Shown here one piece after another: positions 25,277 to 58,277 of a stretch of 64,000 nt of DNA. The stretch comes from Podarcis erhardii (lineage: Eukaryota): NCBI GenBank assembly GCA_964252035.1, contig OZ176211.1; one strand, written 5' to 3'. Under the pieces are notes generated by a model. The model was not told where the DNA came from. It worked only from the letters and a program-made list of their open reading frames with translations, and ran no database searches. The translations under genes were made by a program, and so were the position numbers. How positions within the stretch are numbered: the stretch's first letter is position 1; each line of letters opens with the position of its first letter.

Positions 25277-25645
25277 CAGTGGTACCTTGGGTTACATTAG
25301 AAACACATTGCAGAACGTCAGTGATAACAACATAATGTTCTTCTTATTTGTATTGTGGCTGTTTGTATTTTCCTATTAATGGTGTAATGTATTTATGTTT
25401 ATACAGTGGTACCTCGGGTTACATACGCTTCAGGTTACAAACGCTTCAGGTTACAGACTCCGCTAACCCAGAAATAGTACCTCGGGTTAAGAACTTTGCT
25501 TCAGGATGAGAACAGAAATCAGGCTGCGGCAGTGCGGCGGCAGCAGGAGGCCCCATTAGCTAAAGTGGTGCTTCAACTTAAGAACAGTTTCAGGTTAAGA
25601 ATGGACCTCCGGAACGAATTAAGTACTTAACCCGAGGTACCACTG
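25277..25645 (+). mobile_element. Composite Tc1/pogo-type MITE: left TIR remnant + 110-nt captured flank + MITE body (25404-25645)
   Basis: Outer ends cagtggtacc / ggtaccactg with TA on both sides; 25294-25521 is nearly identical to 43556-43783. Confidence 0.9.
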
Positions 25646-27507
25646 TACATGTGACATTCCATGCATGACTTTGCTGTGGATTCTGGGAAAGCTACAGTTT
25701 TGGGGAGACATACTTGCAGGTTTGCTTTAATGATAGCTGTGCAGTGCCGGCAAGTTCTCTGAAACCCCATCCACACAAAATAGGATATATAGTTATGCCT
25801 TAATCTTATGAGCTCCTGGGCCGAGACAGCAGCTGTTAGGATTCAATGCTGGAGGGCAGCATGTTGTCGAAAGGACACAACTGGTGCCCTCTTGCCGACA
25901 CTGAAATCCACGCCATCACCGGTACAGAGCAAATGTTTGCATTCCAAATGTAAGTTACAGTGAGGGCAGGAATGGGGGTGGGGGGAGCGGAGCAGCTTAT
26001 ATATCTACCCAGCTTTCCTGGAGCAGGATCTGAATTTAGCTGCAGAGGTGCATGACTTGTTTGTATCGCTGTAGCAGAAGTCGAGGTATAGAATATGGTT
26101 GTCTGTGGTAGAAACAAATGGAAAAATCAGTGGCTCTCGATAGGCAGTTAGTTTGTCTTCCCTCCAAATTGCATTGTATCTCGCACAAGGAAGAAAGAGT
26201 TTACACCTCTTTTCAATAAGCATGCATGCATGCATAAATTAGTTTGTGGGTGATAAAGAGAGGGACTGTTTTCCCCTTGGGGGGGGGGAAAGTCCAGATA
26301 TATAGGCTTTTAAAGAGCTGCTGCCTTCCATACTGTGTGAATTTAGCCTCAACTTGTGCACATCTGGTTATCAGTGGATCCAAGTCCACTCAGCATTTGA
26401 GAAAAGGGTGGAGGTTGACTAGGTTGCCATTTGAAATGTTAAACCGGAATCTAGCAGAGCTTTCCTTCACAACAACAACAAACCAACCCTACCTTGATGC
26501 ATCTGTTTTTATTGCTTAATATTCTAATGTGTGTACAAGCAATGTTCGATGGGAAGCTTTTCTGAGTTTAATTTTCCCTGGAGTAGTAAATTCAATGTGG
26601 AATGAAATCGCCCATATAGAGTTCATAACCATGACTCTAATAAACGGAGTGTTCTTTAGATATGAAAAATGAGAACTTCAAAAAAAATAACAAATAACTC
26701 AAAGTACATTTGAGAATTTAACACGAATCAGTCTGATGGAAAAAGGGAGGGCAGGGGAGGGGGAGTCTCTTGACTCCAGCTGTTACCAACAGTCTTGGCA
26801 CGGGGGGGGGGGGAGTCTCTAATCCAACTGTTGCAGAGTGGAAAAGTCTGAGTTAGAGGCTTGAAGCCATCCCACAACAGATGAAATTCCCAACTTCCCC
26901 TTATTATGTCAACTGTCTCAAAGGTACCCATCCTTCTATAACCCAATGGTGACTTGTTTTCCTCTCTTGCCTTTTTGCCCTCCTCTGGCAATCCTTTTGG
27001 ATTTTATCCACACAAATGCTTAGAGCTGCTTTGCACATTGCAGATCTCAGTGGTATACCCAATGCTAAAAACAAATATGATTCATTCATTCATCAATATA
27101 CAACATAATGCCAAAGTAGGATCCTAAGTGGTTTAGAAAGTATAAAAACCAGTTATGCAAAAAAAAGGCTGTGCTCCAGGCAAGAAAACATCAAATGTTT
27201 CTACACACAAATGCACACACCTCTCTCCATCAAGAAGCACGTTGCTCAGGTAGGCATCAGCACTTAGTGATGCTGCAAAGTAGGACTCATGGGGGCTGTA
27301 GACTGGAGATGGTGAGGCCTAGGGAGAGTATCAAACGCCAGTTAGACAGCCCTGGAGGGCCACACTGAGCCTACAGAACATATGTGGTATGTGATTGGGA
27401 GAAAAAAATGTTTTAAACATATATATTCCACAGGTGGTCTCAACAGGAAGGACAGATCATCTTCAGCTCCTTGACAAGTGTAGATTGACAGCAAATTGAT
27501 CTCCCTG

Positions 27508-41584: not shown

Positions 41585-41670
41585 AGCATAGGAATAGTCC
41601 TGCTGGATCAGGCCAAGGGCCCATCTAGCCCAGCATCCTGTTCTCACAGTGGCCAACCAGATACTTGTGG
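41585..41670 (-). mobile_element. CR1-family 3' end
   Basis: cctgctggatcaggccaagggcccatctagcccagcatcctgttctcacagtggccaaccagat. Confidence 0.75.
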
Positions 41671-41799
41671 AATTGACCAGGTCTCCAAGTGACTTACAAC
41701 ACATTAACAAATATAAATGTACAGATACCATTAACAGACAGATACAAACAACTGTAATACACCAACAATGACAATGAGAACATTATGTTGTTAATAGTA

Positions 41800-43430: not shown

Positions 43431-43665
43431 GCAGTCGCCACCTGAGATTATGTCGTTTTGCTGCCCAAACTTCCTGTTGCTGTTATGGGAGTTGTTGTGA
43501 TTGTTGTTTCAATTTATATACCACCCTTTATCAAAAGATCTCAGGGTGGTACACAACATTAGAAACACATTACAGAACGTCAGTGATAACAACATAATGT
43601 TCTTCTTATTTGTATTGTGGCTGTTTGTATTTTCCTATTAATGGTGTAATGTATTTATGTTTATA

Positions 43666-43907
43666 CAGTGGTACCTCGGGTTACATACGCTTCAGGTTAC
43701 AAACGCTTCAGGTTACAGACTCTGCTAACCCAGAAATAGTACCTCGGGTTAAGAACTTTGCTTCAGGATGAGAACAGAAATCATGCAGCGGCAGCGCAAT
43801 GGCAGCAGGAGGCCTCATTAGCTAAAGTGGTGCTTCAGGTTAAGGACAGTTTCAGGTTAAGAACGAACCTCTGGAATGAATTAAATACTTAACCAGAGGT
43901 ACCACTG
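43666..43907 (+). mobile_element. Tc1/pogo-type MITE (cagtggtacctc family)
   Basis: TIRs cagtggtacctc / gaggtaccactg; TA TSD. Confidence 0.93.
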
Positions 43908-43984
43908 TAGTTCTCAATGTATTGTAAGTTGCTTGGAGACCTGAGCACCAACAAGTCTCAGAAATAATACGAACATAGAAATAT

Positions 43985-44445
43985 AAGTGCCGGTATGCAC
44001 CATGCCTCCACCATCCCCCTGATGCCCCCTCTTGCCCACCTGCCCACCCACTCACTCCCCAGCACCTTTGCCCCTTCCATGAAAAGGAGGCACCAGAGCA
44101 GAGGTTCCTCACCGTGACCTTTCCCCAATTTTCAGGCACCTTCCTGGATGGCATGTTGGCAATTGTAAGAGTCATGCCAAAGCACCTCTGGGAGGCCATG
44201 CCTGCAGCCTCGGGGTGTGGTGATGGCAGAGGAAGTGGCCAAGTTGGGAAGGTGAGTGGGCAAGTGAGATGGTGGTAGGGGAAAAACAGGTGGCAGTATA
44301 GCATACCAGCACATTGGGCTCCCCCCCCCCAGCCAGAACTAAGTTCTGGCACCTCTCAGGTGAGCACCATTGCCATTCTGAGAGAACAAGGGAGGTGCTC
44401 TCAGTGAGTTTCAGCACCTCTTTTTTTTAGAAAACTAGCACTGCT
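43985..44445. mobile_element. Degenerate hAT-type element fragment
   Basis: Right end cagcacctcttttttttagaaaactagcactg is typical of cagtgct-ended non-autonomous elements; left end unclear. Confidence 0.45.
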
Positions 44446-48259: not shown

Positions 48260-48494
48260 CAGTGGTACCTCAGGTTACATACGCTTCAGGTTACAGATGC
48301 TTCAGGTTACAGACTCCGCTAACCCAGAAATAGTGCTTCAGGATGAGAACAGAAATCGTGCTCCGGCGGCTCCGGCGGCGCGGCGGCAGCAGAGGGAGGC
48401 CCAATTAGCTAAAGTGGTGCTTCAGGTTAAGAATAGTTTCAGGTTAAGAACGGACCTCTGGAACAAATTAAGTACTTAACCCGAGGTACCACTG
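48260..48494 (+). mobile_element. Tc1/pogo-type MITE (cagtggtacctc family)
   Basis: TIRs and TA TSD; internal deletion and ctccggcgg duplication. Confidence 0.93.
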
Positions 48495-53408: not shown

Positions 53409-53650
53409 CAGTGGAACCTCAGGTTAAGAACTTAATTTGTTCTGGAGGTCCGTTCTTAACCTGACACTGTTCTTAACCTGAGGTACCACTTTAGCTAATG
53501 GGGCCTCCCACTGCCGCTGCGCCGCCACCGCACGATTTCTGTTCTCATCCTGAAGCAAAGTTCTTAACCCGAGGTACTATTTCTGGGTTAGCAGAGTCTG
53601 TAACCTGAAGCATCTGTAACCTGAAGCATCTGTAACCCGAAGTACCACTG
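53409..53650 (-). mobile_element. Tc1/pogo-type MITE (cagtggtacctc family), reverse orientation
   Basis: Ends cagtggaacctc / gaagtaccactg; TA TSD. Confidence 0.92.
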
Positions 53651-57321: not shown

Positions 57322-58277
57322 ATTTAGACAATTCTGACAAGCTGAATGGCAATCTTGCACCTACATTAGTTAATCTAAAAGCAGGGGTCCAAGACACATT
57401 AAATTAACACAGCTGAGATTAAAGAACTGTAGGTACTTTTTGTGCAGAATTTCAAGCTATCTGAGTTTTGATTAACTTCTACCCAGTGTTGAGTTTCTAT
57501 GTTTATTGTTTGTATTGCTTTTTGTTTGTGAAAAGTCAGTTTTACATTGTCTGCTGATGTGTGTATCCATTGATTGATTGATTGATTGATTGATTGACTG
57601 ACTGACTGATTGAATATACCGCCCTATACCCACAGGTCTCAGGGCAGTTCAGAGATTATTTTGGTGTGAGAGGTGAATTAATATTTCAAAGTCTGGGATT
57701 CTCATTGTCACAGCTGTTCTTCTGCAACATCTCGCCACACAAATTAGCCAATTTCCTAAGAAAATAGTCCCAGGTCAATATAAGCGGGAGTTCAGGCAAG
57801 GTACATCACAGCAAGAAGAGCGAACTGGAATCATGAGCAAGGATAGAAAGAGCAGAGATGTATGGAGTGGCTAGTTCATCAGAGGTGAATGTAGGGCAAC
57901 GTGACCAGTTCCCCCTCACTGGGCACCGAGCCAAGGGGCCACACAGGGCTACACAACTATGACATGGTGCCCACAGAGAACATAAGGTAAGAGGCAGGGG
58001 GGTCACTGGATTTTGGGCTCACACAGGGCACCACTGAAATGTAAAAGACCAAAGTCCACCCCTGGGCTCATCCTCCAAGGATGCAAAACCTGGCTCCAGG
58101 TCAGGGCTAAGCATGGCACGTAATCCAGATGCAGAGGGTTTTAACAGGGGCATAGAGGAGGGTATTTCCGCCATCCATCCTGGTGGCATCTGGCCACCCT
58201 AACTCCCACATAATTGGGAAGGAATAGCTGGGCCACTGAGACACAGTGCATTTCTTCTAGACAGGCTTGAAGCCTAG

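What the first reader, a model, noticed from the sequence alone, without database searches (positions are those of the whole stretch)
25277..25645. Chimeric MITE that copied 110 nt of flank plus half a MITE from a locus 18 kb away
Seen: 25294-25521 and 43556-43783 (228 nt each) differ at only 2 positions. The tract is 110 nt of non-MITE flank (acattagaaacacatt[g/a]cagaacg...gtttata) plus the first 118 nt of the MITE. After gaaatca the two MITE bodies differ at about 16 of 124 nt. At 25277 the copied flank is preceded by a stranded left TIR stub (ta-cagtggtaccttgggtt). The junction uses the 4-nt microhomology ACAT, present in both the MITE (ggttACATacg) and the donor flank (caACATtag). At 43.5 kb the flank runs on naturally from an L2-like tail (ccacccttta...ctcagggtggtacacaac), so that locus looks like the donor. 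Inference: a break inside the 25 kb MITE was repaired by one-ended invasion of the 43.7 kb copy, synthesis ran past its TIR into unique DNA, and the ends rejoined by microhomology (SDSA plus MMEJ). The product is bounded by TIRs and TA/TA, so it could move as a Pack-MITE-like unit carrying host sequence. Higher CpG content in the 3' halves could inflate their divergence, but cannot explain the shared flank.
Basis: partly seen in the sequence, partly recalled or inferred. Interest (0 to 1): 0.72.

Follow-up and report, generated by a model that had tools for sequence, protein, structure and literature searches.

The report
MITE patched from neighbouring sister copy
A small jumping-gene relic at 25.3 kb was broken and then mended by copying from a sister copy 18 kb away, dragging in about 110 letters of that sister's neighbouring DNA; this is a clean, recent, single-locus example of a repair route already described in animals, not a new kind of element.

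Summary
25294-25521 and 43556-43783 (228 nt) differ at two sites, and it is the only repeat pair of at least 95% identity in the window. The remaining 124 nt of the two MITEs differ at 16 sites.

The 43.6 kb locus is the donor. Its flank belongs to an old interspersed repeat that continues on the far side of that MITE, as a 72% paralogue at 41.7 kb shows.

Short-read contigs of the best-matching run cross the flank-stub-insert junction at single-copy depth. The shared insert sits at about 1.8x depth, so there are two copies, no mobile composite family and no assembly artefact. Three related organisms show only the donor arrangement, at single-copy depth, so the event looks recent and lineage-specific.

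Best reading: break repair templated by the sister MITE, overrunning into its flank and closed on a 4-nt ACAT microhomology. This matches the "single-copy Pack-TIR by gap filling" class (Tan et al. 2021).

- The flank is not unique DNA.
- The copied MITE part may be 21 to 118 nt, because the 5' half is conserved family-wide.
- There is no sign of mobilisation.

The scan holds two unchecked notes of similar events elsewhere in this genome.

The parts
25275..25276 (+). Left TA target-site copy of the resident MITE
   Evidence: Read directly. All four full copies in the window are flanked by TA on both sides.
25277..25297 (+). Stub: positions 1-21 of the resident MITE's left end. It has one mismatch, a T at position 12 where a CpG has decayed.
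   Evidence: 21/21 aligned, 95%. record 17 shows it joined to the unique left flank in reads.
25294..25297 (+). ACAT microhomology at the non-homologous junction. It is shared by MITE positions 18-21 and donor positions 43556-43559.
   Evidence: P(4 nt or more by chance) = 0.016.
25298..25403 (+). Captured donor flank: 106 nt, or 110 nt counting ACAT. It is a copy of 43560-43665 and has one difference inside the 110-nt tract, at 25310.
   Evidence: The depth is about that of two copies in run X19 (record 18).
25404..25521 (+). MITE positions 1-118, 117/118 identical to the donor. At least positions 1-21 are donor-derived. The right end of the copied tract lies somewhere in this stretch.
25522..25645 (+). 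MITE positions 119-242: the resident's own 3' half, 16/124 different from the donor, ending in the right TIR.
   Evidence: Several of its states are rare in the family (25576-25577, table 3).
25646..25647 (+). Right TA target-site copy
43556..43665 (+). Donor flank, the source of the captured 110 nt. From about 43586 onward it belongs to old repeat X.
43666..43907 (+). Donor MITE: 242 nt, TA on both sides, inserted into repeat X.
43910..43955 (+). Continuation of repeat X on the far side of the donor MITE. This part is absent at 25 kb.
   Evidence: the reconstructed empty site aligns across the insertion point with the paralogue at 41.7 kb.
41665..41793 (-). Uninterrupted paralogue of repeat X, about 72% identical. 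It shows what the 43.6 kb site looked like before the MITE inserted.

Best explanation
A resident 242-nt Tc1/mariner-type MITE at 25.3 kb suffered a break inside its left part. The right-hand broken end paired with the sister MITE 18.3 kb downstream, which lies in the same orientation on the same chromosome, and primed repair synthesis leftwards along it. Synthesis did not stop at the donor's terminal repeat. It ran on for about 110 nt into the donor's upstream flank, which is part of an old interspersed repeat.

The new strand then came off the template and was joined to the other broken end, which still carried the first 21 nt of the resident MITE, on the 4-nt overlap ACAT. This is synthesis-dependent strand annealing closed by microhomology-mediated end joining. 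The net result is +127 nt: stub, captured flank, then a whole MITE whose first 21-118 nt are donor-derived and whose remainder is the resident's own.

Shown here:
- the structure;
- the direction, 43 kb to 25 kb;
- two copies only;
- the junction present in reads;
- the donor-only state in relatives.

Inferred:
- that a break occurred, and where;
- the polarity of synthesis;
- the enzymes involved.

The product is most likely a neutral structural change in non-coding DNA. It belongs to the class of single-copy Pack-TIRs formed by transposition-independent gap filling.
For: 1. The 228-nt tract has 2 differences and runs across the flank/MITE boundary in register. It is the only repeat of at least 95% identity in the window.

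2. The donor direction is set by repeat X. The 43.6 kb flank belongs to repeat X, which continues on the other side of that MITE, and a paralogue at 41.7 kb aligns across the insertion point. The 25 kb locus has only the left part of X, plus a stub.

3. The 3' half is older than the insert. At non-CpG sites there are 9/108 differences in the 3' half, against 1/108 in the flank (Fisher p = 0.019) and 1/216 in flank plus 5' half (p = 0.0003). In the 3' half the two copies are no closer to each other (87%) than to a third copy (83-85%).

4. In run X19 a 197-nt contig at depth 107 spans 25144-25340 with 1 mismatch: unique flank, stub, junction and insert. The next contig starts at 25311, immediately after the 25310 difference, and has depth 184. 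Unique DNA on the right has depth 100. This is the graph shape and depth expected for exactly two copies.

5. In runs X1, X4 and X15 (other organisms) the insert sequence lies in one contig at single-copy depth: 16.5 against 19-27, 8.27 against 7.1-7.2, and 8.79 against 8.2-8.6. Each of these contigs carries 34-37 letters to its left that do not fit the stub. In X15 the left-flank contig stops at 25297 with 3 unfitting letters.

6. A homology-first route explains why the captured DNA lies next to a sister MITE. The family is very abundant (summed contig depth 10^6-10^7 against about 10-100 for unique DNA), yet the template was 18 kb away. This matches the cis bias, the microhomology and the pattern of outgroups keeping the plain TE that were reported for single-copy Pack-TIRs (PMC8277862).
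Against: - No site inside the MITE positively shows copying from the donor. The 5' half is conserved in all copies (98-99% outside two sub-family clusters). The donor's one private 5' change is absent from the product.
- The test that the 3' half is older than the insert rests on few sites (p = 0.019 when only the flank is used).
- The evidence from relatives is from short-read contigs. The tool warns that holes prove nothing. For X1 and X4 no contig covering the left flank-stub junction was listed, and X1 has an unexplained second contig over 25343.
- X19 may be the very sample the window was assembled from, so it tests the assembly but is not a second individual.
- Sequence alone cannot separate SDSA followed by MMEJ from a replicative template switch.
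Confidence: 0.7

Rival explanations
1. A replicative template switch (FoSTeS/MMBIR type) rather than break repair. A nascent strand stalled 3 nt beyond the 18-nt terminal stem of the MITE hairpin. It jumped by the ACAT microhomology to the 43.6 kb locus, copied the flank and the start of the sister MITE, and returned to its own template through MITE homology.
For: It gives the same product. The single-stranded MITE folds with an 18-bp terminal stem (z = -3.5), and the stub ends 3 nt past that stem. Template switches between nearby sites guided by microhomology are documented (PMC2621351 and PMC8277862, listed).
Against: A first jump guided by only 4 nt could land anywhere. Landing 110 nt upstream of a sister copy of the same MITE would then be a coincidence, unless the two MITEs were already paired. 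A homology-first route explains the choice of donor directly.
Confidence: 0.15
2. The whole donor unit, flank plus the entire 242-nt MITE, was captured next to a MITE stub. The 3' half then diverged faster because it is CpG-rich. On this reading no resident 3' half survives.
For: The 3' half is the fast-evolving part of this family in every pair (83-87% identity against 94-99% for the 5' half). Seven of the 16 differences are at CpG positions.
Against: Non-CpG differences are still 9/108 in the 3' half against 1/108 in the flank (p = 0.019). The right end of the element coincides exactly with a MITE terminus and a TA next to unrelated DNA, which a random capture would not produce. Both 3' halves carry their own private states (table 3).
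Confidence: 0.05
3. A mobile composite or transduction event. Either the flank-plus-MITE unit is a repeat family of its own, or it was moved by transposase using a false end in the flank (end bypass).
For: The product is bounded by inverted termini and by TA on both sides. A multicopy cargo-carrying hAT element has been noted elsewhere in this genome (unchecked).
Against: There are two copies only, by depth and by graph shape. The donor lacks the stub. Transduction would carry the donor's own 3' half, but that half is 13% different. There is no TA and no TIR-like sequence at 43556.
Confidence: 0.03
4. A two-step rearrangement. Unequal crossing-over between the two MITEs first made an 18-kb tandem duplication with a hybrid MITE. 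An 18-kb deletion from MITE position 21 to the ACAT then removed the first copy.
For: It yields the same final sequence.
Against: It needs two rare events with exactly compensating extents. Nothing in the window shows any remnant of a duplication.
Confidence: 0.03
5. An assembly artefact: reads from two MITE loci were mis-joined.
For: Repeats of this abundance often cause local misassembly.
Against: A k-mer contig at full single-copy depth (107 against 100) crosses the junction with 1 mismatch in 197 nt. The contig boundaries fall exactly where two true copies differing at 25310 would place them.
Confidence: 0.02

Closest known systems
Single-copy Pack-TIRs formed by transposition-independent gap filling in animals (Tan et al. 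2021, Nat Commun, PMC8277862)
   Same: A TIR element keeps both ends and its target-site duplication but holds an internal piece copied from a parental site on the same chromosome a few to tens of kb away. There is microhomology at a breakpoint and the product is single-copy. Outgroups appear to keep the element without the insert.
   Different: Here the parental DNA is the immediate flank of a sister copy of the same MITE, and one junction lies inside MITE-to-MITE homology. Homology, not just proximity, therefore explains the choice of template. My term search of that paper found no mention of this. The cargo is an old repeat fragment, not a gene or unique DNA. The distance is 18 kb, slightly beyond that paper's '<15 kb' class.
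Abortive gap repair with filler DNA at DNA-transposon breaks, the route proposed for internal deletion derivatives and for the origin of MITEs (for example PMC3814204, listed; P-element gap repair as summarised)
   Same: A break in or at a cut-and-paste element is repaired by copying from a template, with a premature end of synthesis and a microhomology junction.
   Different: Those cases usually shorten the element. Here the element gains 127 nt, because synthesis overran the ectopic template's end into its flank. The retained 21-nt stub shows that the break was internal and not a normal excision.
Ectopic gene conversion between dispersed repeats
   Same: A short one-way transfer of sequence between two non-allelic copies of a repeat on one chromosome, with the donor left unchanged.
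   Different: Ordinary conversion tracts end in homology on both sides. Here one end lies outside the repeat and is sealed by end joining, so non-homologous flank is co-transferred.
Pack-MULE and multicopy Pack-TIR families, and end-bypass transduction
   Same: Host or foreign DNA enclosed between the termini of a TIR element.
   Different: There is no amplification: two copies only, the donor and the product. The donor's 3' half was not moved. Membership was tested and not met.

Membership tests
Tc1/mariner-type (Stowaway-like) MITE | TA target-site duplication | tested here: met
   TA lies on both sides of all four full copies and before the stub.
Tc1/mariner-type (Stowaway-like) MITE | Terminal inverted repeats, small size and no coding capacity | tested here: met
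   There is an 18-nt perfect TIR beginning CAGTGG. Copies are 235-242 nt. No ORF is present and nearby ORFs have no Pfam match.
Tc1/mariner-type (Stowaway-like) MITE | High copy number | tested here: met
   There are five termini-bearing copies in 64 kb. About 80,000-180,000 contigs per run were laid on the 1.3-kb stretch, which also holds two other abundant repeats. Summed contig depth in the MITE bins is 10^6-10^7 against about 10-100 for unique DNA. This is crude and is not a copy count.
Tc1/mariner-type (Stowaway-like) MITE | Termini shared with an autonomous Tc1/mariner transposon of the same genome | not testable with these tools
   No genome-wide search and no repeat library were available. 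The superfamily assignment rests on the TA duplication and the CAGT-type termini, from general knowledge.
Single-copy Pack-TIR by gap filling (PMC8277862) | TIR element with both ends and target-site duplication enclosing sequence that is not its own | tested here: met
   TA + stub + 106-110 nt of foreign DNA + MITE + TA.
Single-copy Pack-TIR by gap filling (PMC8277862) | Identifiable parental copy, usually in cis and nearby | tested here: met
   The parental site is 43556-43665, 18.3 kb away on the same strand. The direction is shown by the continuity of repeat X.
Single-copy Pack-TIR by gap filling (PMC8277862) | Captured sequence is non-TE | tested here: inconclusive
   Most of the captured piece belongs to an old interspersed repeat, with a 72% paralogue at 41.7 kb. 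It is foreign to the MITE but is probably TE-derived.
Single-copy Pack-TIR by gap filling (PMC8277862) | Microhomology at a breakpoint | tested here: met
   ACAT, 4 nt, chance 0.016. The other breakpoint is hidden inside MITE homology.
Single-copy Pack-TIR by gap filling (PMC8277862) | Single copy | tested here: met
   Depth is 184 against 100-107, and the contig boundaries fit donor plus one product.
Single-copy Pack-TIR by gap filling (PMC8277862) | Outgroups keep the plain element at the orthologous site | tested here: inconclusive
   X1, X4 and X15 show only the donor-type contig, at single-copy depth. The X15 left-flank contig ends 3 letters after the stub. The plain MITE itself was not read through.
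Mobilised Pack-MITE / multicopy Pack-TIR | Several copies of the composite with different target sites | tested here: not met
   There are two copies only, and one of them is the stub-less donor.
End-bypass transduction | The donor element and its flank move as one unit, so the whole element is near-identical to the donor | tested here: not met
   The 3' half is 16/124 different from the donor, against 2/228 for the rest.

The most novel reading that the evidence does not exclude
Sister-MITE-guided flank capture may be a recurrent process in this MITE-rich genome. Breaks in one MITE would be repaired from a neighbouring copy 20-30 kb away, with synthesis overrunning into that copy's flank. MITE homology would then act as a landing pad that shuffles short pieces of flanking DNA between nearby loci. 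This would give a mechanistic reason for the cis bias of single-copy Pack-TIRs. The scan holds two further, unchecked first-reader notes of the same pattern on other pieces of this genome: 93 nt from 18.5 kb away, and 201 bp from 27 kb away in inverted orientation.
Probability: 0.25. Interest if true: 0.6.

Novelty: new member of a known kind. Interest (0 to 1): 0.35.

Why it matters
As a single event it is a neutral scar in non-coding DNA. Its value is as an unusually legible record of repair. The donor, the recipient, the direction, one microhomology junction and the likely ancestral state in relatives can all be read.

It shows that a dispersed MITE can serve as the homologous entry point for ectopic repair that then exports non-homologous flank. 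If this is frequent, it would help explain how TIR elements pick up nearby DNA without transposing, and why parental copies lie close by. It also warns that near-identical "flanks" of MITEs need not mean shared insertion history.

Tried and rejected
- Looked for further copies of the flank in the window at low stringency. Only the two copies and one 72% paralogue were found.
- Tested whether the contrast between the 5' and 3' halves alone proves that half a MITE was copied. It does not. Outside two sub-family clusters (positions 21-23 and 37-39), the third copy (53.4 kb) differs from the 25 kb and 43.6 kb copies at only 3 and 2 sites in the 5' half, against 19 and 21 in the 3' half.
- Tried to verify the 'L2-like tail' upstream of the donor flank. 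Two other places share the short motif, but the alignment scores are not clearly above shuffles (47 against 34 +/- 5) and the similarity stops near the ACAT.
- Scanned ten ORFs of the window against Pfam for coding context or a transposase. No hits.
- One literature search failed on a disallowed character and was not repeated.
- Rejected transduction, a mobile composite family, the two-step duplication-deletion route and assembly error, for the reasons given under the rival explanations.
- Could not lay reads on the 43.6 kb locus or use long reads.

Full report
**What is there**

25294-25521 and 43556-43783 are 228 nt, gap-free, with two differences: 25310 G/A and 25461 C/T, the second at a CpG. 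The tract is made of 110 nt that is not MITE, followed by the first 118 nt of a 242-nt MITE. The remaining 124 nt of the two MITEs differ at 16 sites, 7 of them at CpG positions.

Upstream of the tract the 25 kb locus has TA plus the first 21 nt of the MITE with one mismatch. The 43 kb locus has unrelated sequence there. The only overlap at the junction is ACAT. The chance of 4 or more nt of microhomology at a random junction is 0.016.

A probe from the 110 nt occurs exactly twice in the window. In a self-comparison of the whole window, no other repeat pair reaches 95% identity over 80 nt.

**The element**

The window holds four full copies: 25404-25645, 43666-43907, 48260-48494 and 53409-53650 on the minus strand. 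All are flanked by TA on both sides and have an 18-nt perfect terminal inverted repeat beginning CAGTGG. They have no coding capacity.

Summed contig depth over the MITE bins in four public runs is 10^6-10^7, against about 10-100 for unique DNA. The family is therefore very abundant, although this is not a copy count. TA duplications and CAGT-type termini place it with Tc1/mariner-derived (Stowaway-like) MITEs. That assignment rests on general knowledge, because no autonomous partner could be searched for.

**Which locus is the source**

The '110-nt flank' is not unique DNA. A low-stringency search found a 72% match at 41793-41709 on the minus strand. Reading that place showed that it continues into sequence resembling what lies after the MITE at 43.9 kb.

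I joined 43480-43665 to 43910-44010 in a script, removing the MITE and one TA. The joined sequence aligns with the 41.7 kb copy straight across the insertion point. So the 43.6 kb MITE inserted into an old interspersed repeat (here called X) whose two halves still flank it. The 25 kb locus has only the left part of X, followed on the right by unrelated DNA. The copy therefore went from 43.6 kb to 25.3 kb.

The similarity is weak and ends near the ACAT, so I could not name it.

**Is it real, and how many copies exist**

Twenty-four public runs from eight coded organisms hold the surrounding 3.8 kb. I laid contigs of four of them on 24800-26100.

In X19, the best holder and possibly the source sample:
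- One 197-nt contig at depth 107 covers 25144-25340 with a single mismatch. It runs through unique left flank, stub, junction and insert.
- The next contig starts at 25311, the base after the 25310 difference. It runs to 25421 at depth 184.
- Unique DNA to the right has depth 100.

These boundaries and depths are what a k=31 graph gives for exactly two copies that differ at 25310. This removes both the assembly-artefact reading and the reading of a widespread composite family.

In X1, X4 and X15, which are three other organisms:
- The insert sequence lies in a single contig at single-copy depth: 16.5 against 19-27, 8.27 against 7.1-7.2, and 8.79 against 8.2-8.6.
- Each such contig carries 34-37 further letters on its left that do not fit the stub. 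This is the donor arrangement.
- In X15 the contig from the unique left flank ends at 25297 with three unfitting letters, as expected if a plain MITE follows.

I read this as absence of the chimera in the relatives, and therefore as a recent, lineage-specific event. That fits the 0.9% divergence of the tract. The support is moderate only. These are contigs, the tool warns that holes prove nothing, no left-junction contig was listed for X1 and X4, and X1 has a second, unexplained contig over 25343.

**How much of the MITE was copied**

The 5' half of this family is conserved in general. The copy at 53.4 kb differs from the 25 kb and 43.6 kb copies at 7 and 6 of 118 sites, 4 of them in two sub-family clusters (positions 21-23 and 37-39). 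In the 3' half it differs at 19 and 21 of 124 sites. Family-wide, the read table lists one common variant in the 5' half against six in the 3' half (table 3).

The donor's only private change in the 5' half, T at 43723, is not in the product. So nothing inside the MITE positively marks copying. The donor-derived MITE part is at least positions 1-21, because they are contiguous with the captured flank, and at most positions 1-118.

What does hold is that the 3' half is not part of the recent copy:
- Non-CpG differences are 9/108 there, against 1/108 in the flank (p = 0.019) and 1/216 in flank plus 5' half (p = 0.0003).
- The two 3' halves are no closer to each other (87%) than to the third copy (83-85%).
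- The element ends exactly at a MITE terminus with TA.

**Mechanism**

1. A resident MITE breaks somewhere between positions 21 and 118.
2. The right-hand end invades the sister MITE by homology.
3. Synthesis runs leftwards, out of the donor's terminus and about 110 nt into repeat X.
4. The strand is released and joined to the left end on ACAT.

A replicative template switch that starts from the ACAT gives the same product. It is suggested by the stub ending 3 nt beyond the 18-bp terminal stem of the folded MITE. However, a 4-nt first jump would not explain why it landed next to a sister MITE. I therefore put break repair at about 0.7 and the replicative version at about 0.15.

Four other routes are rejected or made unlikely by the 3' divergence, the copy number, the lack of a TA or TIR-like end at 43556, and parsimony. 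They are transduction by end bypass, a mobile composite family, capture of the whole donor unit, and an 18-kb duplication followed by an 18-kb deletion.

With a family this abundant, use of a template 18 kb away points to a strong proximity effect.

**Comparison with what is known**

Tan et al. 2021 (PMC8277862) described 370 Pack-TIRs in animals. They concluded that single-copy ones arise by transposition-independent gap filling. Their evidence was:
- parental copies in cis, 57% within 15 kb;
- microhomology at breakpoints;
- breaks inside rather than at the ends of the element;
- outgroups that retain the plain element.

The present case meets those features as far as I could test them, so it is a new member of that kind. 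It differs in that the parental DNA is the immediate flank of a sister copy of the same MITE, so one junction is hidden in homology. My term search of that paper found no mention of this arrangement. It also differs in that the cargo is itself an old repeat fragment.

There is no evidence that the composite has moved or can move.

**Context from the scan**

Two other first-reader notes on other pieces of this genome describe MITEs carrying a sister MITE's flank from 18.5 and 27 kb away. They are unchecked and I could not read those places. They are the reason I give the recurrent-process reading a probability of 0.25.

**Verdict**

It is an ordinary mechanism seen in an unusually clear instance, with interest 0.35.

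Noticed in passing
other pieces of the same genome (notes s1-214987, s1-217745): Two further first-reader notes describe MITEs that carry the flank of a sister MITE: 201 bp from 27 kb away in inverted orientation, and 93 nt from 18.5 kb away. If real, the process seen here is recurrent in this genome.
   Followed up: no
window 24640-24896 and 25108-25195; also 41600-41660 (-): Two other very abundant interspersed repeats lie just upstream of the chimeric MITE: a SINE-like element ending at 24896, and a second repeat that also abuts the repeat-X paralogue at 41.6 kb. Summed contig depth there is 10^5-10^7.
   Followed up: partly
window 13513-13767: A different 255-nt, CpG-rich element has nearly the same terminal 18 nt as the MITE but an unrelated interior. 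It may be a second MITE family served by the same transposase.
   Followed up: no
window 48260-48494: This MITE copy lacks 19 nt, namely the internal repeat of the terminal motif, and has 12 extra GC-rich nt in the centre. It is a length variant of the family.
   Followed up: partly
window 25007 and 24932-25107: Contigs of three related organisms carry a 9-nt insertion after 25007 relative to the window. The best-matching run shows almost no contig over 24932-25107, which may be a filtering gap rather than a real absence.
   Followed up: no
window 21312-21420 (-), 43480-43557, 57560-57650: A short shared motif, of the form 'tatataccgccc ... ctcagggcgg', is preceded each time by a microsatellite or simple repeat. 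It looks like the end of an unnamed retroelement family, and the donor flank starts right after one such motif.
   Followed up: partly
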